The notes beneath the pieces are model-generated. The model was not told where the DNA came from. It saw only the letters and a list, made by a program, of their open reading frames with translations, and searched no databases. Made by a program: the position numbers and the translations under genes. Shown in pieces: positions 5,877 to 64,000 of a stretch of DNA of 64,000 bases (its first letter is position 1; each line of letters opens with the position of its first letter). Origin of the DNA: Macrostomum lignano. Taxonomy: Eukaryota. Location: contig NIVC01002189.1 in assembly GCA_002269645.1 (NCBI GenBank), positions 166,925 through 230,924 on the forward strand. The letters run 5' to 3'.

Positions 5877-8577
<2,701 letters not shown>

Positions 8578-34078: not shown

Positions 34079-34650
34079 CACCTGTCGCCAAAATTTGACA
34101 GTCTTTGTGTGGTGCCGGAATGCTGAGCTCATGGCACTGCCAGTGACTAACTAACCGATACGTGCACCGGCAACATGCACACTATTCTCTCCCGTTCTCT
34201 TTGCCCTGTCTGGCAGTATCCCTTAGCTTTCATGTACGTAGTAATTGTCATCACGTGACCTATTTCGTTAGTGATTTATAAGCCCTCTCTCATGTTATCA
34301 TTAAATAGGCTGGTTGCTAAGTGAAACAGATCGAAGAATTTTGTAAACTACACGGCACGACACTTTGATGCGAGTACTATAATTAACAATTAGAGGCTAA
34401 ACGGCGCCAATTCACTGTCAGTTGTTGAACTTCTACGGTCAAAAATTATTTAACAAATGCTAGAATACCCTGTATATTTTAAAACTACAAAATATTATTT
34501 TCGATCATCAAGCAATCTGCAAAACAATTAGTACACTTTCAGTATGCATGCGACGATTCAGTAGCAGTTGCATAAATTTGCTTCTCGCAGAATCTTGCCC
34601 ACTTTTCGTCCAAGCGTACGAGCGTCGCGTGTTCACAAAGCCCAATTATT

Positions 34651-37668: not shown

Positions 37669-40600
37669 ATGTCTGCAGTGAAGCTAATAAACTTTGAACA
37701 TTTCTACAATGAGCTGGAGGTGCAGGAGCAGATCCCACTTAAAAAGCTGTTGGTGAGTTTGTACGATTTGATTGGCTTTTTATTGTTTGAATGGATGCGG
37801 TCAATGCCTTGTTTTAGCGCAGCGAGTACTTATTATATTTACAATACTTATTTACGCATGTATTGCATATTGACAAGGCTTCCTCTAATAATATTTTGGC
37901 ATTATACCTTCACGCGTGATTATAAAAGCATGCGCACGCAGTCAATCCGCAGAAGTGATTACGGTAGACTCGCCTGACTGGCTTGATTGCAGAATTTGCT
38001 TCTATGAATCAAATTGTACTACTAGAAGTAGTATTGCACTTATCGCTGTAGCATTACAAACGATATGAAGGTTAAATAAAGATATATTGAATATAAGATC
38101 AGATGGTAAAATTAACGATACAGTTTTCACAATAGCAAAGATCCTTGGCGTGGATTCTTAAAAGTTTGCTGGTAATAAACAGGATTGGTACCATAAACCT
38201 GCATGGTACATCAAACCAGCCATAGACAGTCTACCTGGTACAATATCGATGCCACAGACCGTCCAACTTACAATATCAATGTCACAGATAGTCAAACTAG
38301 TACAATATCAATTTCATAGGCATTCTAACTTGTACAATATCAATGTCGTTGACAGTCCAACTGGTACAATATCAATTTCATGGACAGTCCAACTGGTAAC
38401 AATATCGATGCCATAGACAGTCCAACTGGTACAATATCGATGTCATAGACAGTCCAACTGGTACAATATCGATGTCATAGACAGTCCAACTGGTACAATA
38501 TATCAATGCCATAGACAGTCCAACTGGTACAATATATCGAGGTCATAGACAGTCCAACTGTTACAATAATGACGTCATAAAAAGTCTAACGGGTATAATA
38601 AATGTGCCGTGGACATGCTACATTAACGATCCATAAAACCGCCTTACGCAGGCAAAACTACCAACTTGGTTCGGCGAGAAAGGCGTAGAGTTTCACCTTG
38701 ATTTTGACGGCATAGAACAGCTAACTGATGAGGTGTTTCACCTGCTGGAAACATCCGTGCCATACGAGGCCAGAGTCCGAGTTGCTCGAGTCTCCTGCGC
38801 TGGTTGCCGGCACCTTCGGGATGACGGCATGGCTCACCTGGCCCGCGCGTTCCCCCGCCTTCAGCAGCTTAACCTTGACGGCTGCCGGCTGCTCACTGAA
38901 AGAAGTCTGCATTACCTGGGAAAGCACTGTCGAGACCTGAAGTCTGTCAGCATGCTGGGCACCGGACTGACACACTGCGGCTCCAGGCAGCTCGGTTTTC
39001 AAGTTCTGAGCGATCCGGCGTGTCAGTTTATTGACGGTGAGTGCCATTGCTTAAGAGCTACTTAACATGAGCAGCAAAAGTGCATGTAGGACGCTGCTAC
39101 ACTCGCAAGTCGAGCTATAAGTTCCAATTAGGAGGTCGGTTTCGGTAGACTTACACTGTAATAGCTAGACAAAGTGAGGAGAAATCAAATTTGTGCCCGA
39201 GGACAACAGGTCATTTAGGGTGGGCTCAAGCAGGACTCCAGTCCCGAATGATTGTTTCCCAGCTGTTGTGTTAAACATTTGGGCCATGGACTGACAGGTA
39301 GCTTTTATAACGGGCTCTGCACGGAAAAAATCGACTATTAACTAGAATATATGCATAGGGAAAAGTTCTCTTAGAATTTTTGCTGCTGTGCCTGTTGTAA
39401 CTGGGCATCGGATCAAATGTAGCTGCCCTTGGTAACGTGCATCATATCAGATTACTTATAGAGTTGGGACTATCTATGGAGAGCATTGATCAGACAGGAA
39501 AATGTTATGTTGTTTGTAAACGAACATGATGATGTCAGTTTACTTTGTTAGTTCGCAGTGGGGGCTTTGGGAACTGCCGAAAATCAAGGCGAAATTTGAC
39601 TACTTTTTTTACCAAGAACCCACTTGCTGTCCCCCCACACGCCAGGACCGGTGTCCACCACCGCTCGCCTACCAGTGAAGCTGGCCATCATCTGCGACCC
39701 GGCCGTAACCGTCAGCATTGGCGCCCTGGCTCTACCAGGCGCGGTGGGCGGAGCTCAGCCATCTTCCAGCTCCAAGTCGAGGCCGTCGTCCTCAAAATCG
39801 GCGGTAACGTCGTCTGTGCAGCCCCCGCCGACTTTTCAAGCGCTCTCAGCCACTGTTGGCGACCTGGACCTGACTGTGTTCGAGATGCGCGCAGACCTAG
39901 TAAATGCACTGGTCAAGTGAAAGGAGTGATAAACTGGGTGAAGTGAATTCAAGCGTGTTTTGATAGCCTTGCGTGTGCCGATCCCACGAGCAAGCACGGA
40001 CTGGGGGGGGGGGGTCGCCACACACACACCCCTCTCGATTACCCCAGCTAATGCTGGCACACATTTTACAGCTGGGTGAACTGAAGAAATGCAGAGTTAA
40101 GTGTCAAAACCTAATTCAAAACCTTGTCAAATCTATGAATTTGTTTAAATAGTTTAGCCTGTGCTTGACCATAGGCATCGCAGATGAGGACGATTTTCAA
40201 ATGTTTAGAATAGTACTTAGTCCCCAATTACTTTTCGCCAAACCCCTTGCTCAGGTGTACAGCTCGCTGTTCATGTCCAACACAGCCGGTTTCGTGCTGG
40301 TAGTGGATGCGGAGCGCACAGAGAATCCCCAGCTAGAAATTATGCGAATGATTGACGCAGTTCGTGGAGCGGTGAGTCTGACAGATCTGTCCATTTAATG
40401 TGCGCTCGTAGGTATTTCACCTTCATTAATCGTCACGCGCCTCGCCGTCGCAGGTGTTCGAAGCGCCGCTGCTTCTAGTCGCTACGGTGAGCAGCCAGAA
40501 AGGGGTTGAGAATGTTGCCTCGCTGAAATCCGACCTGGAAAACATGCTCAGGGATCAGGTAGACAACATGAAGGAGCACTTGGAGAAGGAGCACTTAAAT

Positions 40601-43600
40601 AGGTAAGAATAATAGTTTCGTTTTGTGCTCTGAGCAGCCTATCAGATAATCTCTCAGACACGAAATACGCTGCTTCAATCATAACTTCAGTTGCTACGAC
40701 AAGGACTTTCCGCACCAGTGGCGTTACGTTCAGTCGATTCAGTGCGCGGATGTGACCCACTTTCCCATCACTTTGGTCGCCGTTCCAGTCGAAGGCTTCA
40801 ATGAAGACTGGGTGAGCTTCAAATGAAAACTACTTGTATTCAATAAGACACCTAGGCTCAGAAAGAGACAGATTTTTTAAACCGGAATTTGAATTCAAAC
40901 ATTCTCAGGTATTCGAGACTACACTCCGGGAAGTAAAGGTGGACTCCAACGTACAAGCTCAAGTGCAGTATTGGGCGGAGCACGATTACGTAAGTTGCTT
41001 GTTCGCCATTTGCTTTAGGAATAGACTACTTCAAGTACAGTACGGGTACAAGTACTGTAAAACAAATAACAACTGCTTACTTGTTTGTAGATGTTTGCCA
41101 TTGACGCGTTGGACCGGTGCACCAAGGCGGACTTCATGGAGGTCAGTGTTAGCTGAATCTGACATGCAATCTGAATCTGAATGCACAGATTATCTTAACA
41201 GTTGTAAATGCTTATTCTGTTCTTTCAGTTGCGCTCCCTTTCGGCTCCGCCGTCCGTCGTAGTGACCACAATGAAGTGCGTTATGCTCATATTCGACATT
41301 CCATTCACGGAAGACGACGCCTGGCCAACGGCAAAGAACCTCGTGTCGGAGACGCGCTTTCTGTTGCGATTCAAGGACACGAATTACATTGTGAGAAACT
41401 TGGTGAACTAATCTAAAATTTTCCTGATTCGTCCTTAAGTCAAACCCAACAAATCCGCTTTCAGACGGAGTCTCTCTCGGGCAGACACGCCAAGCTGTTG
41501 GCGGACCTGACCGCCCTTGTTCCAGAGTGGGAGACCTTTGGAGAAACTGTGAGAGTTGCTTCTTTCTTCTGCGTATTTAATTTATAATTCCTAAAAACAG
41601 CGCTCATCTCGCAGGTGAAACGGTGGTTCAACATTATCAACTGCATGTGGCTCTACGTGTACGCGGTGATCAAGTACCTGCTGTTGGTGAAGGAGCACGA
41701 GCGGGAGCTGAATCCGGCTGGAGCAGCCGCGGCTGAGTCAGCGGGAATCGAAAAGGAGGTAAAAGTACATTGTGACGTTTAGACTGGCGGGAACTATTGA
41801 TATTTACTCCACAGCGAATGAGAAATCTATTCTAGGGACTTATTACTAACGAGTAGTGCGAAACTAAAATGAGAAACGAATCACAAACAGTAATTCGTTT
41901 CAGCAGTCTAACATAACAAAGTTCGTTCCTTGTTTCACTTGCATGTAGAATTTAGAGGCTCAGGTGTCAGCATGAGCGTCACTGCTTACCCCTCTTTACT
42001 GCTGCGGGTGAACTGTAGCCTTGATGTGCAATTTGCGATTTCCACTTCCCTCCTCACCTGTCTACCTCAGAGCAATCGTCTGGCGCGTCACGTGACCCAA
42101 CTGGCCAGAACAGCCGCCGAGTCGCTGCAGCTGTGGGAGACGCGTCGCCTCACCGAGTCCAACTGGCAACTGGCTGATCGGCTGAGCGACTTTCTGGCTG
42201 CTCAGCAGTCGCAACAACAGCAGCAGCAGTCGTGGCGGCGAATCTTCCCACTGAATGTGCTGATGTCTGAGCTGGGCCTGCCGCAGCGGGAGAGCCGGCG
42301 GATGGTGGCGCTGCTGAAGAAGCTGCATCAAATGGTGCGGGATTGCTGGACTGTGCGCCTTGGTCTGCCCAAAGAATGGAAGGATAGAAAAAAACATATA
42401 TTTTGATAGATTCAGTAGAATTTCGTATGAAACATTTATTATCTTTCCAAAGGGTTCATTTGCTACTATGCACTTGTTACTACGAGTAGTAAAACTCTCG
42501 ATAAGATAATCACAGTTCCTGCAAAATTCAATCGCAGGGCAAGCTGCTCTTCTTCCCGGAAGGGACGAACCAGCCAGTGGTGCTGGACCTGGCCTGGTTC
42601 ATGGCCTGTCTCGCCCATCTCGATGCCATCGCCGACTACCGCAACGGCGACAGCTGCTGGACGCTCGGCCGCAATGTGCCGGCCCTCAGCGAGGCGGAGC
42701 TGCGCGCTGAACTACTGGCTGCCGGAGCCACCGAGGATGAAGTGAGTCATGCATTTTGTGAGCTATTTAATACTAATTACTGACAAAGCTCAAAAGGCAA
42801 CAGTATGACTATTGACTAGTGATTCCTCAAGGCTGCCACCACGGAAATGAAGTATGTCTCTGGAAATGCAAATTTCCCTAAGACTTTTCTGTTTATTTGC
42901 TTTAGAACGACTTAGCCCGTGTTTTTCTGTTGTTTATGAAGTTGTTTTCATGTGTCTGGTGCTGTCGGACAAGCCATCTGGTTAATGTTTACGACGTGCG
43001 CACAGATGGCTTCAAATAGCAATCTGATGCACTAAATCGTTGACCATAACGTTTCTAAGGTATCGAGGGTCCATCATATTAGTAATAACTTAATGCTTAG
43101 CGATGCAAAAACCAAACTTCCGCAGGCTGAGACCTTACGCCGCATCCTCCTTCGCTTCGGCCTGCTCGGCCACACGGACACGGTTCGCGAGTCCACCCAG
43201 GCCGGCCGGGTCGCCCGCCTTCAGCACGCGGCGGAGGTCTCGAGCCGGCGCTACTTCCTCTGGTCGCGCCTGGAGCCCCGCGTGTCCATCCGGTTCAGCG
43301 CCACGGAAGAGAAGCTTTCCATGCGGCACCACAAGAGCATGTACATGCCGGACCTGCAGTCCGAGGACTTCCCACCCGGCGACATTTGCCTGCTGTTCTC
43401 CGTGAAGTTCCGCGTCGGCTTTCCGGCCAACCTGCTGGCGAGGTTCGCCACCGCCTGCATGCAGAGTCCCGTGGCCACCGGCGTGGTGCAGGTGTGGCGC
43501 ACCGGGATGCACGTGCAGCGCGGAGTCTGCGACATCCTCTGCACCTACGGCCTGCATTCAAGTAAGCCCTGGGTGTGGCAGGCAGAGCAGCTCAGCGGTA

Positions 43601-46600
43601 AACGCGTTCAACTCAAAGTCGATCCTGTGCGCGGCCACATTAATTTGGGACTCGAGCGCAAAAATCTGATTCGTGCTGCGCAGCTCGCCCCATGGCCATC
43701 CGTCCCCGACCCCAAGGGCACAGAGAGTGTACATGTTTGACAACGAAAAGGTTAGGGCCGAGTGTGTGCCTGCGAGCGCAGGGGCTTTAGCCCAGTGGTC
43801 CAGCGAAGCGCTCTGATGTGCCAGGCTCGATTCCAAGTGCAGTCGCATTAATTTGGGGCTGAATTGGAATCTCGGCTTGGCTCTGCTCGTGTAAATAACG
43901 TCCTTGATGGCCAACCCTGAAGGCACAGTGAAGTGTACATGCCTAACGATAAATTAAGTTAGGGCCGCTGTACACTCCTGTGTGAGTGTGTGCCGTGCCT
44001 GTGCGTATGACTGCGTACGTATCCGCGCGCTTGTGTGCCTGCTCAGGGGAGTCGGCGGAATGGGCAGTAATGCCTCTCGCCAGCTGTGTGAAATGGTTGG
44101 GTGCACACAGCCCCTGCCTCTAATAAAAATAGTATGCCTGCGCTGAAGGGTCTGAAGGGTCCTCCGCTTGATCCACGGCAGCGCCCAAAGCCACTCCACC
44201 ACAGTGCTGAATAGCAAAAAGTTCCGATTCTCTCTAAAGATTTAAAAATTCTGCGGGAAGCTGAATGCATGCCTATCTCTTTTTATCGCAAGTTACCGCA
44301 GCCATAATTTGCGCTTTCACCTCCTTCCTGGGCATAATTAAAATAATGATTTTTAAGTCACGTTTGAAATCTCATTTGCTTCGACAATTGACATCCAAAA
44401 TGAATGAGATAATTTTGTTTGTCTCATTAGTTTGTCTCTAATTTTATTTTTCCATTTGTGATGGAGCTACTCCATAATAGCGTAAATTGGGAATGCATAA
44501 ATGAGCCGCCTCAATCATTCTTTTTCCTTCACTGTTATTCCGTGACCCAGCTACAGCTACGCTAAACGGGAGGGATAAGCTTTGTGGTTTTCTCTGAGCA
44601 GTGTTTACCTTTGCAAAACGACTCCTAAAATCCGCACCGCACCGCAGCCCTGGCTTCGTCTTCCATTGACTTCGAGTGCCGCATGAATGAAACTGTGCCA
44701 GGGGCCAACAGTGACTCGCTCAAAGAGTACATCTGGTCCTGCTTCAGCGACCTGCTGACCACCTTGGAGTCCGTGGCTGCCGAGTATCCCTACCTGCATC
44801 ACAAGGTGCGTTTTTTATAGAGCATTAATTATTGCTTCATCATAATTACATGTATGCGTGCATACAGGCTTTAAGGTGCTTAGAAGTTCGCAATGAACAG
44901 TGTAATGACGTGCAACGCGTATTTAGATGTGAGGCAAGGTTTGGTGAAGGGTGATCTGAGTGAGGGGCCATCGAAGGTAATTGACGGTAGGAGAAATGGT
45001 TTGCCGTTTGTTGTGTAGATTAGTGGTCTCAGTACTAACTACAACTTAACTGGCACCAACCCAGCAACTTACCGCAACCCAAATGTCTACAATCCAACCG
45101 AACACAACCCATCCGATCATAACCAAATACCTAACAACAACTCAACTGACCACAACCTCACTGGCCGCAACCCAATTGACCACAACCTCACTGGCCGCAA
45201 CCCAATTGACCACAACCTCACTGGCCGCAACCCAACTGACCACAACCTCACTGGCCGCAACCCAATTGACCACAACCTCACTGGCCGCAACCCAATTGAC
45301 CACAACCTCACTGGCCGCAACCCAACTGACCACAACCTCACTGGCCGCAACCCAATTGACCACAACCTCACTGGCCGCAACCCAACTGACCACAACCTCA
45401 CTGGCCGCAACCCAATTGACCACAACCTCACTGGCCGCAACCCAATTGACCACAACCTCACTGGCCGCAACCCAACTGACCACAACCTCACTGGCCGCAA
45501 CCCAATTGACCACAACCTCACTGGCCGCAACCCAACTGACCACAACCTCACTGGCCGCAACCCAATTGACCACGACCCAACCGGATCAACTCCGCAGCTG
45601 CGAGTCTACTGCCGCGGTGAATGCTTTCACTCGGGCCTAAAGAACACCTTTTCGGTACCGGAGGTCGGCCGGACCCTCGCCAACCACAAGAGCTGCAGCA
45701 AGTGCCGCGCCAAGCAGATGACCGACGCCGAGTGGCGCTTCATGTGGTACCGTCTGGCGCCGTTTCCGCAGCACGACTGGATGGACCGATACCAGAACTC
45801 CTTCTCCTGCGAGCACTGCTTCTTGTGGAAGAACACCGTGGCGAAGATGTGGCGCCACTTCTGTCGTGTCTACCCGACCTTCGCGTCCAAGGCATTCGAC
45901 GTGGTGTCTGGCCTGCCAGCCTCTTTGCAGGGCAACCTGCTGGTCGCGGCCAGCCGGCCCAGATTCGACGAAGAAAAGTCTTCGGATCAGCCGGTGACGC
46001 TGGAGACGCTGCTCCGGTCTCGCCTGCCGATGCGGCACGCCAGCTTCGACCACCTGGAGGTCAGCTTCCTGCACCGTCCCGGCTGCGAACAGGCCGTCTG
46101 GTTGGCCCTGCATGACGACGCCAGTGAGGACGCCATCATTGGCCTGACGCTTCGCGATCGTCAGCTGAAGTTTAGCTTGAAGAAAAGCGCTCTTCACGAC
46201 TGGGAGTTTGTCAGGCAACTTGAGGACGACAGTCTGCCCGCTGACGAGCCGATCACGGATGTGGTGCTCAGAATCACCGGCTGCTGCTACAACGACCACT
46301 ACGATGTTAGCCGTCATTTAATCTTATTCTCTGATCAACTGCTTCTAATAGTTGTAAAGATGTAAAACCCTGTATAAAGACACCCAAATCGATACTTTTA
46401 AGCCTTACGGAATCGAAAATATTTTGTATTCTCTGATACGCTCGTAGAAGTGGCTGTATTCCTGAATTTTGTTCAGGCGTGACGGGGGGGGCAATCGTCT
46501 TTTTAGTTTATTTAAGTAGCGATATACTCCCAGAGTAGTGCAGTCCCAGACCATTTTGGCGATGCTAGTGCAGTCCCAGACCATTTTGGTGATGCTCGTG

Positions 46601-48628
46601 CAGTCCCAGACCATCTGAGTGATGCTAGTGCAGTCCCAGACCATTTTGGCGATGCTAGTGCAGTCCCAGACCATCTGAGCGATGCTAGTGCAATCCCAGA
46701 CCATTTTGGCGATGCTAGTGCAGTCCCAGACCATTTTGGTGATGCTCGTGCAGTCCCAGACCATCTGAGTGATGCTAGTGCAGTCCCAGACCATTTTGGC
46801 GATGCTAGTGCAGTCCCAGACCATCTGAGCGATGCTAGTGCAGTCCCAGACCATTTTGGCGATGCTAGTGCAGTCCCAGACCATCTGAGCGATGCTAGTG
46901 CAGTCCCAGACCATCTGAGCGATGCTAGTGCAGTCCCAGACCATCTGAGCGATGCTAGTGCAGTCCCAGACCATCTGAGCGATGCTAGTGCAGTCCCAGA
47001 CCATTTTGGGCGATGCTTGTGCAGTCCCAGACCATTTGTGTTATTCTGTTCGAGTGTTTGACACTGCAGACGCAATTGACTATAAAAAAACTCATTTCAG
47101 TGCTACTTCAACCAACTGGAAGTTTCAATCAACAGCGAAGTTTTGCTGCGAGCTCCCATAACGGATCAGCTGTACGCTTTTGTGCGAGCTCGCTACCCGC
47201 TCGAGGAGCAAGAGCCTTCATCCGAAAGTCGGAACCTGGCCATTCTGGGCTGTCCGCAGTTTGCGGTAATTTTATTTCATTTTTCAAGCCTCTAGGACGA
47301 ATTCAAAAAATGACAGAATGCATCTTTGTACCATACGGGTTCTACGCTCCAGTCAAATTAGTTGATTCACGTCGTTCGCATTTTCATATCTTGTTTGTAG
47401 TGGCGTCAACTTTTTATGTTCGGGCATATTGCACTGGATAAAATGTGTTACCTATTGCGCAAAGAAATTTAGTGAAGTAACCTTTATGATGCTCTCGAGC
47501 TGGGCCCAGCAAAAATAAAAGTACGCATAACGAACTGGGCACTCTAAATTCGTGATTGTTTCTACACTGTCCGCAGCACGTTTCCACCTTGCACTTCCAT
47601 CCCGGCATGCTGCTGCTGTTCCGCACCGGAGTCGGTCAGACCTGGTTGCCGGGCGTCGTCACCAGCATCCGCGACGGCCTTCTGGAGGTGGCGCCGCCGG
47701 AGGATCTGCAGCACGGCAGGCTGTTCGCTGTCGACTCTGACGACATCCGGCCGTTGGGCTTTTACCCGGAGGAGATCAACGCCGTAGTTGACAAGAGTGA
47801 GCAGATAAAACACTTCTCGTTCAGCTGATAGCATTGCTTAAGTCTTGGATGTACTTTAAGTCTAAAGGTCAATGCCAAAATTCCGCAGAACAACTGAAGG
47901 GCTTCGATCAGTGGTACGACTATCTGTCGGCTTACCCCACATATCTGCCCGTGCCGTTTGGAAACTTTCAATACCTGGACGTGAGTCTTGCTTGATTAAT
48001 TTTCACGCTTTTTGCACCTGGCAAGACATTGGCGAAGTTTCTGTAGTTTGAAATTAGAAATTATATTTTTTAAATAAGCTTCGTCGAATCGTCGGTGTTC
48101 ACCTATGCGCCTAATCAGCAGGTGGGTATGCCAAGGAGCTCTCAGTCAATATTATGGCAAGACTTCTGTAGCGAAGTATTAGAATTCAATGTAGAATGCC
48201 GCGTAGGCAAGGTTTGATAGCGAAAAATAAATTCAACTGTCGGACGGACTTTGACGAGGCTTAAGCCGCAGTCCCGACGCCTGACTTGAATGCTAATTCA
48301 GCTCTGGTTGGTGAAGAGAGACTGCTGACATCTGCCTGAACCCAGCGCTGACCTGGCCTGGCGCAACTCTCTCTCCCACCACTTCAGAGCCAGTACACTC
48401 CGCTGCCCATCCGGCACAAGCAGTCGAGACGCTGCACCTCCAGCGTGAACTCGCCCTACTCCCTGACCGCCGGCCTGACCGTCAAGTGGAACCCGGCCAG
48501 GAATGCCGGCTACTTTGTCGTGCTGCCGGGTACGCTCAAGTCCGAGGACATCTTCATCGCGCCCAGGATAAAGATGCAGTCGCCGAAAGATCAGCGGTTG
48601 CACTTTTTGTGTCGCGGTCTGCAGTGGA
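37669..48628 (+). CDS. ROCO-A: LRR - degenerate Roc with inserted dynein-MTBD-like domain - COR - SPRY-like - MBT-like - NHR-like
   Basis: Phase-consistent GT-AG exons: 37669-37752, 38721-39036, 39646-39899, 40255-40371, 40454-40602, 40691-40811, 40909-40989, 41091-41141, 41229-41390, 41465-41548, 41615-41758, 42071-42334, 42538-42741, 43126-43561, 44648-44805, 45598-46305, 47577-47796, 47889-47980, 48388-48628; a possible short last exon starts near 49142. FBXL-type LRRs (LQQLNLDGCRLLTERSL); COR-like LHQMGKLLFF...VVLDLAWF and FPANLLARF...VWRTG. Confidence 0.8.
38213..38590. repeat. Degenerate ~32-bp minisatellite (ROCO-A intron 1)
   Basis: ATAGACAGTCCAACTGGTACAATATCGATGCC-like units. Confidence 0.85.
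40040..40105 (-). mobile_element. SINE family 1 internal fragment
   Basis: CATTTTACAGCTGGGTGAACTGAAGAAATGCAGAGTTAAGTGTC matches the 30449-30756 copy. Confidence 0.75.
43575..44050 (+). mobile_element. Two tandem diverged copies of a second tRNA-derived SINE-like element
   Basis: A box TAGCCCAGTGG (43788-98) and B-box-like GGCTCGATTCC (43824-34); first copy has CAGCTCAGCGG (43588-98). Shared blocks CATTAATTTGGG, GGCACAG..AGTGTACATG and GTTAGGGCCG at ~205-bp spacing. Confidence 0.5.
45142..45573. repeat. 30-bp minisatellite (GACCACAACCTCACTGGCCGCAACCCAA(T/C)T)
   Basis: About 14 near-perfect units, intronic. Confidence 0.95.
46536..47037. repeat. 30-bp minisatellite (GATGCTAGTGCAGTCCCAGACCATTTTGGC)
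   Basis: About 16 units, intronic. Confidence 0.95.
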
Positions 48629-48895
48629 GTAAGTTGTTATCTAATTGCGTTGCCACCTTGCTTGCTGGATAATTAAAAGGGCAGAGCAGCTCAGTGGTAA
48701 CCGCGTCACATTCAATTGGGGCTGTCGTGCGATCACACCCATGAGAGCCAAACCTCCAAGGCACAGAGAGCGTACACGCTGTACACCTACGTGCTTGTAT
48801 GTTGTATTCAGGAGTCAAGAGTCGCCCAGCACTGCTTGTGGGATGATGTCGAAAGAAGCGTTGCGCCATGATGCCAAAAACCTCCTAAAAATTGC

Positions 48896-49100
48896 TTTTA
48901 CTTTTATTGTACTTATTTTGCCAGCTAGAAGTAATTGACCAAACGGCCAATCTACTGTGTAATTATTCTCGTTCAAGGCAGCAGGTGCAGGTGTGTGTGC
49001 AAAAATTGATTTTACTTTTATTGTACTTATTTTGCCAGCTAGAAGTAATTGACCAAACGGCCAATCTACTGTGTAATTGTTCCCGTTCAAGGCAGCGGGC
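48896..49100. repeat. Two-copy direct repeat, period ~114 bp
   Basis: TTTACTTTTATTGTACTTATTTTGCCAGCTAGAAGTAATTGACCAAACGGCC occurs twice. Confidence 0.9.
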
Positions 49101-49393
49101 GCAGCTGTGTCTCTATTAGGAGATTTTTTCCATTTTTTAAGGCAACTACGAACAGCGCTAAGCAAAATTTAAAACGCATTAAAGATGCTGAAGATTTCCG
49201 AGACAAGAACTGCTTCACTTTTTTACTTTCACACCTGCCTTATCTTGTAAATCTGCAACAAAAAACCAAACGCCTCATCGCGAGGTTGAGGCGCTTAAAA
49301 TGAGGAGGCACCGGCCAGGGAGGGACTGGCGACGCGCGTCTTTTATGAACTGAAAGCGAGCAGAGCTGAGCAGCAGCACTGCGAGACCGGCAT

Positions 49394-49686
49394 TCATTTC
49401 TCTGTCACTGGGTAGAAACCAATGTGCTGGAAGTTCTGCAGGAAGGCCAAATCTTCGGCTGCCGGTGCCGGTGCCTGCGGGTCGGCACCGTGGCACTTGT
49501 AGATGATCTCCATGGCCAGACCGAATGCTTCCGCCGTGATGGTCGGCAGCAGCCGCTCCAGTGTCCGGGTTTGCCGGCTGAGCGCGGGATCCGCGTTGGC
49601 CTCGATCAGCCAGGGCTTGCCGGCCGAGTCCACCAGCACGTCCAGGCCCAGCAGGCTGAACGTGTTCCGGCACGGGTGCCGCTCCC

Positions 49687-49735
<49 letters not shown>

Positions 49736-51001
49736 GCCGCTGCTGTTGCGCCGGTCCTTCTGCACCCGCTGCGCCAGCGCCTCAACCAGGGCGGCCACGA
49801 GCAACTTGACCTTCGGATGCAGCTCCCTGATCGTCCAGTCGTTGCCGAATTCGCTGCTCGGCAGCTGGTTGAGGTAGCTGTTCATCTGCTGCACCGTCCA
49901 GATGGTGTCCTCCTTGTTAGCCTCGTAACCAGACTGTTTGGCCTGCACTGCCTGGTTGGTGAGGTGCGTGTCTAGGCGCTGCTTGTCGCAGACCAGAAAG
50001 TCATTCAGCGCCAGCCGCACGTAGCCGGTGTGGTAGAACGCCAGCAGCCCCGAGCCGGTGGTTACTAGGAGTAGGAAGACGCGCAAGTCGAACTTCTTGC
50101 CGCTGAGCAGCATGGGGTCGGTCATGTAGCACTGCACCACCTTGCCGATGCCCCAGCGGTCGCTGGACAGGCTGCGCAGCATCGCTGCCTCGCCGTCCTC
50201 GCGAAATGCCAACTGAATTCCTTCGCCCTTTGCAAAGTTGTGCGGCTTCACTATCCACACCGGGTGCATGGCCAGGAGGCGCCGGGCCAGCGCCGGCAGA
50301 GAGCTCCGGTCTGTGTCTCGATCAACGATGAATGTAGCCGGTATATGGCTCTGCAGGCAGAGGCTGGTGCTGGAGTGCTTGTGCGCCATGCAGGTGACGG
50401 CCAGTTGGCTCTTGTTGCTGATCAACGTCACCCAGGGTATTCGGTTCATCACCATCGGCCTGTGGCGCTGCTGGCTGGCCGCCATGCACAGGGCATATGT
50501 GCTGGACGACAGGTTGCCCCAGAAGAAAGCGAAGTCGGGCATGGCCGCGAGGGCGGACTGCACGCAGACACAGCTCCACTGCCGGTTGGCTGGGCCACAG
50601 GTACCGACGCTTTTGGCTACGCTGCTGCCGCTGCCGCCGCCGCACATTTTCTCGCTGGGCCTCGGCAGCAGCTGCGGCCAGCCGAGGTGGGCGAAGAACT
50701 CGCGCACATCGGCGGCGCCGTTGCGGTACTCGCACATGAAACCGCCGGCTGGAAGCAGCTGCAGCGGCGGCGGCGGCGCAGAAGCCAGCCGGGACGGTGG
50801 CGCCTGAGGGATTGTCGCCGCGAAGCGGAGCAACTTCTCGGGCACCGAGAAAGTGTTGACTGAGTCGAGCCGGTTCGCTTCCGAGCCCACATTGTTCGAC
50901 TGCTTTGCCGCTGGAACGGGCTGGCGACTGCTGGTCGACTGGCGCTTCTGCGGTTGCTGCGGCTGCGGCTGCGGCTGCGGCTGCTCGAGAAGTCTGCCCA
51001 T
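49394..51001 (-). CDS. TTLL10: Tubulin-tyrosine-ligase-like protein, closest recalled match TTLL10 (polyglycylase); intronless; polyQ tract
   Basis: WIVKP...GEGI; VVQCYMTDPMLLSGKKFDLR; GYVRL; HLTNQ; DTIWTVQQMNSYL; LLGLDVLVD...PWLIEANADPAL (ExN motif intact); (CTG)n at ~49688-49733 encodes a Gln run. Confidence 0.85.
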
Positions 51002-51812
51002 AATAAACCTCCTTTGCCCTTTGATTTCCGGCTAGGCGAGCGGTAGATTAATGAATGTGGCCATAATTCATATTCGGGCGCGAGTTCGTGCAGATTAAAG
51101 GCGGGTGGGCCATAGACTTAAACGGCTCATATGGTAAAAAAAGAGAGATATGATGGTTGACTTCAGGTCCTCAAAGCGCGCTGACTGCTATTTGAGACGT
51201 AAGATGCCTCATAGTTGTCGGTTTAAACTTGTGCTACAGTGCTCAACAGTGCTCCATTTGGGGATTGGAGTGCTTGAGCTCCCGCTGATGTCTCGCGCTG
51301 TGACGTCAATATCAAGCTATACGGCAGATGCTTCTCCCGCCTCATGTGGCTCCGGCTCGCTTGGGGAATTTCTATAATCCCATCGCTTCTCGTTTTGATT
51401 CGCATGACAAGCTGAGGCTAATGGCCTGGATTGCATTGATGCCCTGGGCGGCCGGTTGCCCGAGCCGGAGTCCGCTTGGCTAAAAGCAAGGCCTGCCGCT
51501 AATCCGTTGTCTGATTGACTTTCGGGTAAACTTTTCCGCTGCCTGTTTTTCCCAGTGTTTATGTCGCTCTCTCTTTGCGAACTGCAGCAGGGAGGCGGGA
51601 GTGTCTGTCCCCGGTCCCCGGAACGCACTTGTGCCTAGGCCGGGCTTTCCGGCAGGACTGTCTGATTGCCTGATTATTCAATATTTGCCTGGCCAGTTGC
51701 TCCGGAATTTTGGCTCTTCGATAATCGATTGAATGCGCGGCTTGCTTTTTTGTTTCTTTTTGCTCCCAAATTGCTTCTTAGTTCCCATTTTCTATCGCCG
51801 AATTCGCTCTCA
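51002..51812. promoter_or_regulatory. Probable bidirectional promoter region between TTLL10-like (-) and ROCO-B (+)
   Basis: Divergent start codons ~810 bp apart; inferred from geometry only. Confidence 0.35.
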
Positions 51813-54800
51813 ATGAACGCAACAGGTGCCAACACGAGCGACATGCACCTGCTGGACAAGCAGGGAGTGGAGCTGTCCGAGGACGAGTATCGATATGTAG
51901 TGAAGCACTACGATACCAACCTCATCTATCTGATTGGAATGCTGCTTCGATTCACCGTGAGACTCTTAATTTGCTTTCTCTGCTGTGTCTAGCGACTGGC
52001 ATAAATGTGTGTATTTGTTTATTTACACACCTGTTAATGCGCCCAATTTGCAGTCCTTTCTGTCCAAGGCAGACTTGGCTTACCTGCCTGGAATCGACAG
52101 CGAACTGGGCGTCAATCAGGTAAGCAGTGCTGGCACCGGCCTCTCTTAATCCCCAAGACTTAGCTGGACTGATGCCCCTGCCCGCAGATCACGCAGGGAA
52201 TCTGGCCGGTGCTGCGCAGCTACAGAGATCAGCTGCTGCTGAAGCGGATGCTGGAACAGGACGGCTACAAGGAGAGCAGCCTATGCGCCAAAACTGGACC
52301 GGTTGCTAGGGTCAGATCTGGCAGGGCGGTAAGTGGCAGGTGCACCTGTATAGGGGAAGTGATTCGCGGGGGCTGAGATGCTATTGTGGGCAGATACGAG
52401 TGTAGCAATGCATTATGAAGAGTATGAAGGGTATGAAGGGTTATGACTAATCCCGTTGGTTGCGGTCTCCAATGTCAGACGCACTGCTTGCCAGCAGTCG
52501 AAAGTTGCATATTATGCAGCGCGTTCCTTCCTCAGGGGACAAAATGACGTCTAAAAGTAATGTTGTGTTATACATTGTTTTATCGCTGAAGGAAATACAA
52601 AAAATCGTAATTCCTTGAGTTAAGACCCGAAGAAATACACTGCAGCAGACAGAGAAGATGACAGGAACGAAGACGCTATGACTGACACACCATTACACTA
52701 TAAGCGATACTATGAAGCGAGACTATGACACTGCAATACTTTAGGAAAGAGACAAAAATTATGGATATGTAGGCAGAGTTGCTGCATATCTAACCAAAAT
52801 TTAACCAACCATACCTACGTTTCTAACGATAAAATCCCATCAAAGCTTATGGATTAACCGTGGCAAGCCCGTGGAAAAACCCCTCTAGGACGCTCGTCCG
52901 GAATCCGCCAGCGGCAACGGGCTGCGCATCGCCCAGATGCTACATTCGCACAGCCGCGACCTCTGCGACTCGCACACGGCGGCCAAGACCGTCCTGACGC
53001 AAGACGACCTTGGCCGCCACGTGGACTGCCTTCGCAACATTCGCGCCAAGAACCAGGTGCTGCCGCAGCCGTTCCCCAACGCCGCTTTGCTCTCGGCGGC
53101 CAACCTCACCAACTTGGAGCTGTCGCGGTGCAAGATGCGCGACACCGGCTGGCTCAGCCAGATGTCCGAGGGCCTCATCAATCTGCAGTTGCACGAAAAC
53201 TTCATCACTAAGCTGGACCCCAGCCTGAGCAGGCTGAAGCGTTTAAAGTTTCTCAACTTGAGCTACAATCCCATTAGCTACCTGCCCACCTTCGTCTGCG
53301 ACCTGCCTTCGCTTTCGCTGCTGGACGCCAGCGGGACGCAGCTGAACCGCTTGCCGGAGGAGATTGGCCGCATGTCGGCGCTTACGAACCTCCTGCTAAA
53401 GGAGACGCTGATCCGGCGCCTTCCAGCCGGATTCGGCCGGCTAAAGAAGCTCAAGCAGCTCAACTTGTCCGGCGTCCCGCTGCCCAAGATGTCTAAAAGT
53501 CGCGGCGGTCGCGGCGGCGGCGGTGGCGGCGGCGGCGGCGGCGGCGGCAGCGATGGTGGCGGCGAGGGCGGCGGCGAGGGCAGCTCCGGAGAGGCTCCGC
53601 GGGCCCGGCGGATCAGCCAGGCACAGCGCAGCCGGGCGGCGGGGGCGGCGGCCTGGGCGCCGGGCTGATCATGTCCTACAAGGCCTGGTCCGAGTACCGC
53701 AACCACGGCTTCGCGGTGCAGAAGGCGCTGAAAGGCATCGGCGAGGAGCTGTTCGCCCGACACGACGTTAACAATGATAAAATCCTGCAGGCGCAGGAGC
53801 TGCAGAACTTCCTAGCCGAGCTGTTCGCCGTGGTGCCTCGTCTGTGCGTTGAGGACGGCGGCGGGCCGAGTGAGGCCGAGTTCCCTATAGAACTGCTGGG
53901 CTGCCGCAGCTTGGAGTCGCTGGTGCTCAGCAACCAGGGCATCCGGCGGGTGCCGCAGGAGATCTCGGCCCTCAAGCAGCTCCGGACCCTCGTACTGGAC
54001 AACAATCTCTACCTGGAGAGCGTCCAGGGCAACCTGCCGGAACTAAAAGGTATGGTGGCTGAGGAGCCTGCGTTGTCATGCACTCTTTCGACAGTAGAGA
54101 TGGACGGGGAGATGCGCAGTGAGGCGGGGCCGTCTCGGCAACAATAAAATAACATCGCGTGCTGGGGGAAGCGGATAAATGCAAACAGTGCAGATGAGGA
54201 TTTCACAGAGCATCTGGCTTCTGCAGCAGCGCCAAGCTAGTTGCAATTTCAAAAGCCATGTCTGATTGTTTTTTCCAGTCTTTTCAAGGCTGGACTTACA
54301 GGCGTGTTGTGCATTGGCAGATAAATGCGATGCAGATAAAGTATAATTGAAGCCAAATAAACAGGATATAAATGCATTCATCCTGGACCCCGGACAGACG
54401 TAGAAAAGATGAGATAGAATAAGATAGATACGATATAGATGTCAGGCAGACACAAGCGGCAAGCCACATCGCAAACCTGCACTCCCCGCTACGTACCCGA
54501 ACCTCAGTGCTGTCGATGCAGGGTTGCGAGAACCTGAAGACGCCGCCCCAGGAGATCCTGGCGCAGGGCATGATGGCCACCATCGCCTACCTTCGCCGAC
54601 TGGCCAGCGGCAGCGTCGCCTGCTACCGCACCAAGCTCATGTTTGTCGGCCTGGGCGGCGCTGGGAAGACGAGGTGAGACTGGCCTAAACGGCTACTCAT
54701 TTCACTTTGCAGTGGATTGAAAGTTTCAGTGTCTCTAAAAATAGAAACTAATAAATCGGCTTTGGAAATGGAATCTATTGTTACATCCATTGTTCATTGA

Positions 54801-63395: not shown

Positions 63396-63703
63396 GTACC
63401 GGGAGCTTTTTTGTCACTTTTTCTTGTACTATACTGGTTTAAAAATATCCACAAGTCTAACAAAGCTTTGCTATCAAGCACTAGTTGCTAGGCGCTGTGC
63501 AGTGGGCACAGACGGACTGCATAGGTACAGTCGCGCTTCTATCATGCGACGAACGAAATAACGAAGCAAGCATCCTAACTGGAGTTTCGGTGCATCAAAA
63601 CTCAAGCAGGTGCAACAAGCAACAGAGCAAATATGCGTAAACACTAATTATCATTCAGTTGCAAAACCGCCCGATCTCTTGCAATTTGAGCTTTATAGAG
63701 GCT

Positions 63704-64000
63704 CAGCAATGGGGCTGGACAACCGTCAGACACTCAGTCCACAGTGCACACAGAGGCTCAGCAATGGGCTGGACAACCGTCAGACACTCAGTCCACAGTG
63801 CACACAGAGGCTCAGCATTGGGCTGGACAACCGTCAGACAGTCAGTCCACAGTGCACACAGATACTCAGCATTGGGGCTGGACAACCGTCAGACAGTCAG
63901 TCCACAGTGCACACAGATACTCAGCATTGGGGGCTGGACAACCGTCAGACACTCAGTCCACAGTGCACACAGATACTCAGCATTGGGGCTGGACAACCGT
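63704..64000. repeat. 54-56-bp minisatellite running off the window end
   Basis: GGGCTGGACAACCGTCAGACACTCAGTCCACAGTGCACACAGAGGCTCAGCAATG-like units. Confidence 0.95.

What the first reader, a model, noticed from the sequence alone, without database searches (positions are those of the whole stretch)
40909..41758. Dynein heavy-chain microtubule-binding-like domain inserted into a ROCO protein
Seen: small in-phase exons splice to ...MFAIDALDRCTKADFMELRSLSAPPSVVVTTMKCVMLIFDIPFTEDDAWPTAKNLVSETRFLLRFKDTNYITESLSGRHAKLLADLTALVPEWETFGETVKRWFNIINCMWLYVYAVIKYLLL. Known (recalled pattern, not a database result): the axonemal dynein stalk-tip MTBD reads AxxALxxIxxxDIxELKSxxxPPxxVxxxMxCVxxL...WxxAKxxxxxxxFLxxL...LCxWVxAxxxY, and the match is close through the first helices. 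It sits after the G4-like strand of the dead Roc and before COR. Inference: an LRR-pseudoRoc-COR scaffold that replaced GTP-regulated function with a borrowed motor-type microtubule anchor. I know of no described ROCO with this domain. No AAA ring sequence is present nearby.
Basis: partly seen in the sequence, partly recalled or inferred. Interest (0 to 1): 0.9.

Follow-up and report, generated by a model that had tools for sequence, protein, structure and literature searches.

The report
Dynein-type microtubule anchor in ROCO-like protein
A flatworm (Macrostomum lignano) gene encodes a dynein-style microtubule-binding knob spliced into the middle of a GTPase-dead, ROCO-like scaffold protein; I found no description of this domain combination, and its microtubule binding is inferred, not shown.

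Summary
Exons 40909-40989, 41091-41141, 41229-41390, 41465-41548 and 41615-41758 (+ strand, GT-AG, all phase 0) splice to the quoted peptide. The window is M. lignano contig NIVC01002189.1. An RNA-seq-guided gene model on a 96%-identical duplicate (PAA49605.1, 1755 aa) uses the same junctions. It joins these exons upstream to LRR and Roc-like exons and downstream to COR exons.

The peptide is homologous to the dynein stalk tip:
- phmmer against PDB gives DNAH6 at E=1e-8.
- The AF2 model has pLDDT 85.
- The top 48 Foldseek PDB hits are all dynein stalk or MTBD (TM 0.75, 2.4 Å to the yeast MTBD).
- Pfam MT is sub-threshold (16.7 against 24 bits).

Between the two copies the exons show dN/dS of about 0.12 and no indels. 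No AAA sequence occurs anywhere in the 64 kb.

The host is ROCO-like only by weak but colinear evidence: Pfam COR-A E=0.0065, and profile alignments through Roc, COR-A and COR-B. G1, G3 and G4 are all degenerate. The insertion lies inside the start of COR-A, not between Roc and COR.

Non-dynein MT-domain proteins do exist, as tandem repeats in protists, so the module is not dynein-exclusive. Microtubule binding is untested, and the H6 hallmark residues are replaced. I rate it a new domain architecture, lineage-restricted, of moderate to high interest.

The parts
37669..37752 (+). Exon 0: probable start codon, MSAVKLINFEHFYNELEVQEQIPLKKLL (aa 1-28); donor GTGAGT
   Evidence: Matches the N-terminal part of P0131; located
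38652..39036 (+). Exon 1: FBXL-type (cysteine-containing) leucine-rich repeats, about aa 29-156
   Evidence: phmmer against PDB gives FBXL2 E=1.6e-14 and FBXL17 E=2.7e-9; the junctions are as in P0131
39646..40602 (+). Exons 2-4 (39646-39899, 40255-40371, 40454-40602): Roc-like pseudo-GTPase, about aa 157-330. G1 is CDPAVTVS, G3 is EMRAD and G4 is TVSSQ. A Ser/Pro-rich stretch replaces switch I.
   Evidence: Colinear MAFFT and hhalign alignment to the ROCO family. There is no Pfam Roc or Ras hit. Against the duplicate: 6 synonymous and 2 non-synonymous changes, no indels.
40691..40811 (+). Exon 5: first COR-A element (CYDKDFPHQWRYVQSIQ...), about aa 331-370, directly upstream of the insertion
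   Evidence: Aligns to the family motif 'GExIPxxWLxxE' that opens COR-A
40909..40989 (+). Exon 6: N-terminal stalk stub (CC1-like helix), aa 371-397
   Evidence: AF2 helix at residues 13-35 of the 281-aa piece; the Pfam MT alignment starts at residue 23
41091..41758 (+). Exons 7-10 (41091-41141, 41229-41390, 41465-41548, 41615-41758): MTBD helices H1-H6 and the start of CC2, aa 398-544
   Evidence: phmmer against PDB gives DNAH6 E=9.6e-9. AF2 pLDDT is about 95 in the core. The Foldseek top 48 hits are all dynein stalk or MTBD. Against the duplicate: 6 synonymous and 2 non-synonymous changes, no indels.
42071..42334 (+). Exon 11: long helix (ESNRLARHV...QQQQQQS), then the resumption of COR-A (SWRRIFPLNVLMSELGL...KKLHQM), aa 545-632
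   Evidence: AF2 helix 171-232; Pfam COR-A hit, E=0.0065, spans this exon and the next
42538..44805 (+). Exons 12-14 (42538-42741, 43126-43561, 44648-44805): rest of COR-A, and COR-B, about aa 633-898
   Evidence: Colinear alignment to ROCO COR-A and COR-B, including 'flPaglfxR', 'WxxG' and the C-terminal 'PCxxC'. AF2 was poor. Against the duplicate: 15.5 synonymous and 3.5 non-synonymous changes.
45598..53668 (+). Remaining exons of the same ORF: 45598-46305, then approximately 47101-47267, 47577-47798, 47888-47980, 48382-48629, 51828-51956, 52054-52131, 52185-52328 and 52889-53668. They encode about 590 aa with no recognisable domain, then about 8 canonical LRRs and a poly-Gly tail. The stop codon is at 53666-53668.
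   Evidence: P0002 and P0131 map exon by exon. Pfam and PDB searches of the middle part find nothing.

Best explanation
The window (Macrostomum lignano, Mlig_3_7 contig NIVC01002189.1) carries a transcribed gene under purifying selection for a protein of about 1,760 aa.

Its order is: a short N-terminus, FBXL-type LRRs, a Roc-like domain with no intact nucleotide-binding motif, and COR-A/COR-B, followed by an unknown region of about 590 aa and a second LRR block. About 35 residues into COR-A sits an insertion of roughly 230 aa. The insertion consists of a short CC1-like helix (about 23 aa), a six-helix dynein-type microtubule-binding domain, the first turns of CC2, an Ala/Gly linker and one long helix.

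Shown here: the exon structure, homology and predicted fold of the MTBD, selective constraint, and the absence of any AAA motor sequence.

Inferred: the module still binds the microtubule lattice at the tubulin intradimer groove, as dynein's MTBD does. Because it has no AAA ring and only a stub of stalk, its affinity would be fixed rather than ATP-gated. It would then act as a passive tether that places the pseudo-GTPase scaffold, and whatever its two LRR blocks bind, on microtubules or axonemes.

Probable origin: exon-level insertion of a stalk-tip fragment into a diverged ROCO paralogue. A canonical ROCO ORF (EF-hand, LRR, Roc, COR) begins 2 nt after this ORF's stop codon.
For: - Splicing: GT-AG borders and phase-0 exons. 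The transcript-guided model P0131 has identical junctions from the LRR through the Roc-like, MTBD and COR exons. The annotation is RNA-seq based (PMC5730564).
- Constraint: window against the duplicate L003 shows 0 indels in 3,402 exon nt, compared with 450 gap columns in introns. pS=0.041, pN=0.0048, dN/dS=0.116. The MTBD exons have 6 synonymous and 2 non-synonymous changes.
- MTBD homology: PDB phmmer E=9.6e-9 over residues 31-167 to DNAH6. 30 MT-domain proteins are found among 1.84 billion representatives. The alignment keeps K-x-D-x-x-E-x-[KR], PP, W-x-x-A-K and the six best-conserved basic columns: K39, R46, K80, R91, K128, R129.
- Fold: AF2 mean pLDDT 85, core about 95. The Foldseek PDB top 48 hits are all dynein stalk or MTBD: 6kjn TM 0.75 at rmsd 2.4 Å, 6rzb_C TM 0.69, 6l4p_B TM 0.71.
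- ROCO frame: Pfam COR-A is the best hit of the whole protein (E=0.0065) and sits at the expected place. hhalign against a 21-member ROCO family is colinear over 183 columns. The Roc part and the COR part each match separately at the right family positions; the whole-construct score is 24.9 against 16.6±2.6 for shuffles, with 2 of 150 shuffles reaching it. MAFFT of the insertion-deleted construct aligns G1, G3, G4, COR-A and COR-B in order.
- No AAA sequence in the window.
- MTBDs grafted with a short coiled coil onto an unrelated base are the constructs used to decorate microtubules in vitro (SRS-MTBD fusions, PMC6629372).
Against: - Pfam MT is below its gathering score (16.7 against 24 bits).
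- Four near-invariant H6 positions of the family (S, A, A, W) are F, I, I, Y here. The 'DKDNI' motif between H4 and H5 is lost. The microtubule-facing or stalk-coupling surface may therefore be altered.
- The Roc-like part gives no Pfam Roc or Ras hit.
- phmmer of the insertion-deleted construct hits no ROCO structure in PDB.
- The AF2 model of the COR region is unreliable (pLDDT 46.6), and Foldseek returns only weak winged-helix matches.
- No gene is annotated on the window's own copy; both transcript-based models lie on the 96%-identical duplicate.
- No orthologue with this architecture was found outside Macrostomum, so there is no comparative support for function.
Confidence: 0.6

Rival explanations
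1. The domain is a true MTBD homologue but no longer binds microtubules. With H6 repacked and no long stalk, it serves as a helical protein-protein interaction or structural module within the scaffold.
For: Near-invariant H6 residues S, A, A, W are replaced by F, I, I, Y, and the DKD motif is lost. Pfam MT is sub-threshold. CC1 is only about 23 residues, and CC2 is broken by an Ala/Gly linker of lower confidence.
Against: All hallmark residues of H1-H3 and the six best-conserved basic columns are kept. The predicted core superposes on microtubule-bound and high-affinity MTBD structures at 2.4-3.7 Å. Strong purifying selection applies, though that fits any function.
Confidence: 0.25
2. The host is not a ROCO derivative. 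The weak Roc and COR similarities are chance, and the protein is an LRR protein with an MT domain and otherwise novel regions.
For: There is no Pfam Roc or COR-B hit, and COR-A is below threshold. There are no PDB ROCO hits. A family HMM gives only p of about 0.001, ranking second among 2,000 shuffles. The COR fold was not recovered.
Against: Two independent local profile matches (Roc G3-G4 region and COR-A core) fall in the right order and at the right family positions. The colinear alignment extends to the COR-B 'PCxxC' end. COR-A is the top Pfam hit of an unbiased scan. A canonical ROCO lies immediately downstream on the same strand.
Confidence: 0.13
3. The main mRNA starts at exon 40909 by spliced-leader trans-splicing. 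The M. lignano leader ends in ATG, in frame with GTA TTC GAG. The mature protein would then begin with the MTBD and lack the LRR and pseudo-Roc part, which would be a separate upstream cistron.
For: P0002's coding sequence starts one codon before exon 40909, although the reading frame is open further upstream in that contig. The leader sequence ends in ATG (PMC8629364). Reading through the 40811 donor reaches a stop after 4 codons, about 85 nt before the 40909 acceptor, which is a typical operon spacing.
Against: P0131, from the same allele on another contig (99.75% identical to L001), joins exon 40691-40811 to 40909 in frame. The truncated P0002 lies within 1.4 kb of an error-rich contig end. 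The Roc-like exons are under purifying selection and free of indels. COR-A is split by the insertion, so it is complete only if both sides are in one chain.
Confidence: 0.15

Closest known systems
Dynein heavy-chain microtubule-binding domain (stalk tip; Pfam MT PF12777). Closest solved relatives: DNAH6 (9fqr_Xz, 9d2f_T, 8j07_g5), cytoplasmic dynein MTBD (6kjn, 6rzb_C, 3err) and DNAH7 (6rza_X).
   Same: Six short helices flanked by CC1 and CC2. The motifs K-x-D-[ILV]-x-E-[LVM]-[KR], PP and W-x-x-A-K are conserved, as are basic residues on H1, H3 and before H6. The predicted fold superposes at 2.4-3.7 Å.
   Different: There is no AAA+ ring, linker or long stalk anywhere in the 64 kb. CC1 is only about 3 heptads. 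H6 carries F, I, I, Y instead of S, A, A, W. Identity is only about 25-30%, and the Pfam score is below the family cut-off. There is no H2-H3 flap.
Non-dynein proteins with single or tandem MT domains from protist transcriptomes and metagenomes (P0003, P0005, P0006, P0010, P0015, P0021, P0032; MMETSP, Tara Oceans, Diphylleia rotans)
   Same: The MT domain stands outside a motor, with only short flanking helices. These proteins are the best non-self hits of the flatworm peptide (E=2e-11 to 1e-5).
   Different: They carry 2-5 repeats at a period of about 170 aa, score well above the Pfam MT threshold (E=1e-18 to 1e-58), keep the H6 hallmarks, and have no ROCO, LRR or COR parts. None is from an animal. 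I found no paper describing them.
ROCO proteins (LRRK1, LRRK2, MFHAS1, DAPK1, bacterial Roco); the canonical ROCO ORF in this window starts at 53671
   Same: The order LRR, Roc-like, COR-A, COR-B, with colinear motif positions. LRRK2 is also a microtubule-associated ROCO (established knowledge; LRRK2/LRRK1 context in PMC10643122).
   Different: G1, G3 and G4 are all destroyed, so GTP binding is not expected. The LRRs are FBXL-type. No kinase or death domain was seen. About 17% identity to the neighbouring ROCO. LRRK2 contacts microtubules through its own Roc-COR surface, not through an inserted dynein-type domain.
Engineered SRS-MTBD chimeras (dynein MTBD plus a few heptads of stalk grafted onto seryl-tRNA synthetase)
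   Same: An MTBD on a short coiled-coil stub attached to an unrelated globular base. These constructs are the ones used to decorate microtubules without a motor (PMC6629372). From established knowledge, their affinity is set by the fixed heptad registry.
   Different: Those are laboratory constructs with symmetric, registry-locked arms. Here the C-terminal arm is broken by a flexible linker, and the registry is unknown.

Membership tests
Dynein MTBD / Pfam MT (PF12777) | Score at or above the curated Pfam gathering threshold | tested here: not met
   16.7 bits (E=0.0039) for the peptide and 13.5 bits in the whole protein, against a cut-off of 24
Dynein MTBD / Pfam MT (PF12777) | Significant sequence homology to bona fide MTBDs over the whole domain | tested here: met
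   phmmer against PDB: DNAH6 E=9.6e-9, residues 31-167 aligned to 2780-2907. Representative library: E=2e-11 and downward.
Dynein MTBD / Pfam MT (PF12777) | Six-helix bundle between CC1 and CC2 | tested here: met
   AF2 pLDDT 85, with helices in the expected order. Foldseek top 48 hits are all dynein stalk or MTBD; TM 0.69-0.75 to isolated MTBDs.
Dynein MTBD / Pfam MT (PF12777) | Conserved H1-H3 motifs (KxDxxExK/R, PP, WxxAK) | tested here: met
   K39, D41, E44, R46, P51, P52, W76, A79 and K80 are all present
Dynein MTBD / Pfam MT (PF12777) | Conserved H6 motif (S-x-A-A...L-C-x-W-V) | tested here: not met
   F131, I133, I134 and Y140 replace S (95%), A (97%), A (62%) and W (93%)
Dynein MTBD / Pfam MT (PF12777) | Microtubule binding at the tubulin intradimer interface | not testable with these tools
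   Needs co-sedimentation or cryo-EM
Dynein heavy chain | AAA+ ring and long antiparallel stalk flanking the MTBD | tested here: not met
   tblastn with a 4157-aa dynein and five dynein fragments finds no AAA sequence in the 64 kb. The flanks are Roc-like and COR exons.
ROCO | Roc (Ras-like) domain immediately N-terminal to COR | tested here: inconclusive
   No Pfam Roc or Ras hit. hhalign places residues 72-135 of the construct on the family's G3-G4 region (score 23.1, against 16.6±2.6 for shuffles of the full construct).
ROCO | Intact G1 (GxxxxGK[ST]), G3 (DxxGQ) and G4 ([NT]KxD or THxD) motifs | tested here: not met
   The aligned positions read CDPAVTVS, EMRAD and TVSSQ
ROCO | COR-A domain | tested here: inconclusive
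   Pfam COR-A E=0.0065, 16.8 bits against a cut-off of 35.3, at the expected position. The hhalign COR part scores 24.8 on the 'FLHDLG...NPQW' core. The AF2 secondary structure is winged-helix-like but of low confidence.
ROCO | COR-B domain | tested here: inconclusive
   Only a colinear MAFFT alignment ('lPaGlfxR', 'WxxG', 'PCxxC'). No Pfam COR-B hit. AF2 pLDDT below 50.
ROCO | N-terminal repeat domain (usually LRR) | tested here: met
   LRRs are present but of the FBXL type (FBXL2 E=1.6e-14)

The most novel reading that the evidence does not exclude
The dynein microtubule-binding domain is not a motor-only invention. It would be a portable module that evolution has reused at least twice outside dynein: as tandem arrays in protist proteins, and, in an animal, as a nucleotide-independent microtubule anchor grafted into the COR-A domain of a pseudo-GTPase ROCO scaffold. 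This flatworm protein would then be a natural counterpart of the engineered SRS-MTBD chimeras. It would also be a second, independent route, besides LRRK2's own Roc-COR surface, by which a ROCO protein reaches microtubules.
Probability: 0.45. Interest if true: 0.72.

Novelty: new variant of a known kind. Interest (0 to 1): 0.62.

Why it matters
The dynein MTBD is usually treated as part of the motor's allosteric chain: AAA ring, stalk registry, MTBD.

A naturally isolated copy under selection in a non-motor protein offers three things:
- It is a ready-made test of what the domain does without the ring, in particular whether its affinity is fixed.
- It gives an example of domain shuffling into a ROCO scaffold, a family whose best-known member (LRRK2) has a much-debated relation to microtubules.
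- It points to a wider, apparently undescribed set of non-dynein MT-domain proteins.

The limits are real. The gene is known only from Macrostomum, its host domains are highly diverged, and no binding or localisation data exist.

Tried and rejected
1. Folding the whole Roc-MTBD-COR piece. The tools accepted only sequences already on record, and MAFFT stacked ROCO rows onto the MTBD whenever both kinds of homologue were mixed. I therefore folded the MTBD piece and the COR piece separately.
2. COR fold test. AF2 on P0002 residues 229-594 with 15 ROCO rows gave pLDDT 46.6. Foldseek gave only MarR-type winged-helix noise at E>0.3. This is uninformative and does not count against COR.
3. Homologues of the host. 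Word-indexed searches with the 281-aa and 807-aa pieces returned only Macrostomum models.
4. Pseudogene or decay of the Roc-like exons. This was suggested by 7 small indels in L001. I rejected it because L003, the same allele (99.75% identical, 8 mismatches against 30 gaps), is indel-free and gives the intact P0131. The L001 indels are errors near a contig end.
5. Trans-splicing at 40909 as the only form. I considered it and kept it as a minor rival after finding P0131.
6. Origin from a DNAH6-type dynein. DNAH6 is the best PDB hit, but single-domain scores to protist dyneins and to stand-alone MT proteins are similar (27-37 bits). The donor is unresolved.
7. A second MTBD copy or a paralogue in the window: none.
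8. The region after COR: no Pfam or PDB match.
9. Published expression data for Mlig030103: none found. I did not search for Mlig032810.
Full report
**What is in the sequence**

The region is eukaryotic, with short GT-AG introns. Exons 40909-40989, 41091-41141, 41229-41390, 41465-41548 and 41615-41758 are all multiples of three. Spliced, they read VFETTLREVKVDSNVQAQVQYWAEHDY-MFAIDALDRCTKADFME-LRSLSAPPSVVVTTMKCVMLIFDIPFTEDDAWPTAKNLVSETRFLLRFKDTNYI-TESLSGRHAKLLADLTALVPEWETFGET-VKRWFNIINCMWLYVYAVIKYLLLVKEHERELNPAGAAAAESAGIEKE.

I built the rest of the gene by hand and later found independent confirmation:
- The window is 100% identical to Macrostomum lignano Mlig_3_7 contig NIVC01002189.1.
- A 95-96% identical duplicate of the locus lies on contigs NIVC01003779.1 (L001) and NIVC01003833.1 (L003). 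These two are the same allele: 99.75% identical, differing by 8 mismatches and 30 gaps.
- On that duplicate, the RNA-seq-guided annotation (StringTie/TACO/TBONE; PMC5730564) gives PAA49830.1 (P0002, 1371 aa, 5'-truncated) and PAA49605.1 (P0131, 1755 aa).
- P0131 uses exactly my junctions from an N-terminal exon (37669-37752) through the LRR exon (38652-39036), the Roc-like exons (39646-39899, 40255-40371, 40454-40602), 40691-40811, the five MTBD exons, the COR exons (42071-42334, 42538-42741, 43126-43561, 44648-44805), 45598-46305 and on to a stop at 53666-53668.

No gene is annotated on the window's own copy apart from an antisense TTLL gene.

**Is it a functional coding sequence?**

Window against L003:
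- 3,402 exon nucleotides contain no indel, whereas the introns contain 450 gap columns and 3.2% substitutions.
- Overall there are 33.5 synonymous and 12.5 non-synonymous differences: pS 0.041, pN 0.0048, dN/dS 0.116.
- The MTBD exons have 6 synonymous and 2 non-synonymous changes. The Roc-like exons have the same counts.

An earlier comparison with L001 gave the same ratio for exons 40909-46305. It also showed seven small indels in the Roc-like exons. These are assembly errors near a contig end, because the same allele in L003 lacks them.

**Is it a dynein MTBD?**

- Pfam MT (PF12777) is the only Pfam hit of the peptide, but it is sub-threshold: 16.7 bits, E=0.0039, cut-off 24.
- phmmer against all PDB chains is clear. 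DNAH6 gives E=9.6e-9, aligned over residues 31-167 to 2780-2907, which covers H1 to the first turns of CC2. About twenty other dynein heavy chains follow.
- A filter-free search of 1.84 billion representative proteins gave 32 hits. Two are the Macrostomum models, seven are dynein heavy chains or fragments of them, and the rest are non-dynein-length proteins with 2-5 MT domains.
- In an alignment with 40 such domains, the flatworm sequence keeps K39, D41, E44, R46, P51, P52, W76, A79 and K80. It also keeps the six best-conserved basic columns.
- In the same alignment the near-invariant H6 residues S, A, A, W are F, I, I, Y, and the DKD motif is lost.
- AlphaFold2 with this alignment gave mean pLDDT 85, about 95 in the core. 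The helices run in the order CC1 (13-35), H1-H5, H6+CC2 (132-158), a lower-confidence Ala/Gly linker, and one 62-residue helix.
- In Foldseek against PDB the top 48 hits are all dynein stalk or MTBD: 6kjn TM 0.75 at 2.4 Å, 6rzb_C TM 0.69, 6l4p_B TM 0.71.

Homology and fold are established. Family membership by the curated Pfam criterion is not.

**Is the host a ROCO?**

The evidence is weaker but consistent.
- On the whole protein, the best Pfam hit is COR-A (E=0.0065, 16.8 against 35.3 bits), at the expected place. Roc and COR-B give nothing.
- phmmer of an insertion-deleted construct hits only FBXL2 and FBXL17 LRRs in PDB.
- The canonical ROCO ORF downstream (its Roc and COR exons lie at about 54.4-63 kb) retrieved 88 ROCO proteins.
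- A 21-member family profile aligns colinearly with the insertion-deleted construct over 183 columns, P=0.034.
- In a local control the score was 24.9 against 16.6±2.6 for 150 shuffles, with 2 shuffles reaching it. The Roc part (family G3-G4 region) and the COR part (the 'FLHDLG...NPQW' core) each match on their own at the correct positions.
- MAFFT of the insertion-deleted construct lines up, in order: KLAIICDPAVTVS with KLLIIGLAGAGKTS; LTVFEMRADLVY with LTFSVFDFAGQTVY; APLLLVATVSSQ with CPIFVVGTHVDE; DFPHQWRYVQ with KIPKCWLDLE; KKLHQMGKLLFF...VVLDLAWF with QFLHDLGSLMHF...VIINPQYM; and then the COR-B motifs down to PCxxC.

G1, G3 and G4 are therefore all destroyed. The insertion lies inside COR-A, after its first helix, not between Roc and COR. 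The structure test of COR failed for lack of a good alignment: pLDDT 46.6 and no meaningful Foldseek hit.

I put ROCO descent at roughly 0.8.

**How it probably works**

Shown: an MTBD with about three heptads of CC1, the start of CC2 and no motor.

From established knowledge (summarised in PMC6629372), the MTBD binds the tubulin intradimer interface. Its affinity is set by the CC1/CC2 registry. MTBDs on short coiled coils grafted to seryl-tRNA synthetase bind microtubules without a motor.

Inferred: this protein uses the module as a passive, nucleotide-independent microtubule tether for a scaffold made of two LRR blocks and a dead Roc-COR. The retained basic residues on H1, H3 and before H6 favour binding. 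The H6 substitutions and the broken C-terminal arm are the main doubts.

Rivals: loss of microtubule binding (0.25), a non-ROCO host (0.13), and a trans-spliced mRNA that starts at the MTBD (0.15). The third was suggested by P0002's start and by the spliced leader ending in ATG, and it is countered by P0131.

**Comparison with what is known, and novelty**

Literature searches for dynein MTBD with ROCO, 'MTBD-like', PF12777 and ROCO domain architectures found no description of this architecture.

The module outside dynein is not unique. Protist proteins with tandem MT domains score E=1e-18 to 1e-58 on Pfam MT. They come from MMETSP, Tara Oceans and Diphylleia data, and I found no paper on them.

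No orthologue of the flatworm architecture was found outside Macrostomum. This is a new domain architecture built from known parts and restricted to one lineage. It is real and under selection, with its function inferred.

Noticed in passing
window 49394-51001 (- strand): An intronless 535-aa ORF of the tubulin-tyrosine-ligase family (Pfam TTL E=4.9e-35) lies antisense inside the 48.6-51.8 kb intron of the MTBD-bearing gene. It is the only gene annotated on this contig stretch. A tubulin-modifying enzyme nested in a gene with a microtubule-binding domain may be coincidence.
   Followed up: partly
window 53666-53673: The long ORF ends at TGA (53666-53668). An ATG at 53671 opens the next ORF: a weak, sub-threshold EF-hand hit, LRRs, then an intact Roc with GKT and DFAGQ, then COR. 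The sequence reads ...GGC TGA TC ATG TCC.... The frames overlap open for about 170 nt in a GGC-rich stretch. The arrangement is the same in the duplicate. It could be a gene boundary, a reinitiation site, a frameshift site or an undetected intron; this is not resolved.
   Followed up: partly
proteins P0003-P0032 (representative search): Many proteins of 370-1280 aa from protist transcriptomes and metagenomes (MMETSP, Tara Oceans, Diphylleia rotans) carry 2-5 tandem dynein-type MT domains at a period of about 170 aa and have no AAA modules. Pfam MT scores are E=1e-18 to 1e-58. I found no paper describing them.
   Followed up: partly
window 38221-38600, 45138-45577, 46536-47038, 54928-55422, 56000-56458, 60199-60898, 61134-61709, 63697-64000: Long minisatellites (periods 12-54 nt, 6-58 copies, 83-96% matches) sit at the 38.2-38.6 kb intron, in introns further along this strand and at the window's end. 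Several stay open in one or more reading frames and mimic repetitive coding sequence, for example NLTGRNPIDH x15.
   Followed up: no
window 5849-8392 (- strand): An 847-aa ORF with reverse-transcriptase and RNase H domains lies in a GC-rich (61%) block. It is a retroelement remnant or copy.
   Followed up: no
window 32644-34151 (+ strand): The upstream neighbour encodes a glycosyltransferase with the DXD sugar-binding region (Pfam Gly_transf_sug E=6e-7).
   Followed up: no
L001 1-1400 compared with L003 9251-10650: Two contigs of the same assembly carry the same allele but differ by 30 gaps and only 8 mismatches. The indels cluster near the end of L001 and truncate its gene model (P0002). UniProt A0A1I8FPG5 (P0001, named 'FSA_C domain-containing protein') is a frame-scrambled model of the same gene from an older assembly.
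   Followed up: yes
window 40487-40558: A 72-nt in-frame stretch with GT...AG ends (SSQKGVENVASLKSDLENMLRDQ) is removed as an intron in P0001 but kept as coding in the RNA-based P0131. It may be an alternative intron inside the Roc-like domain.
   Followed up: partly
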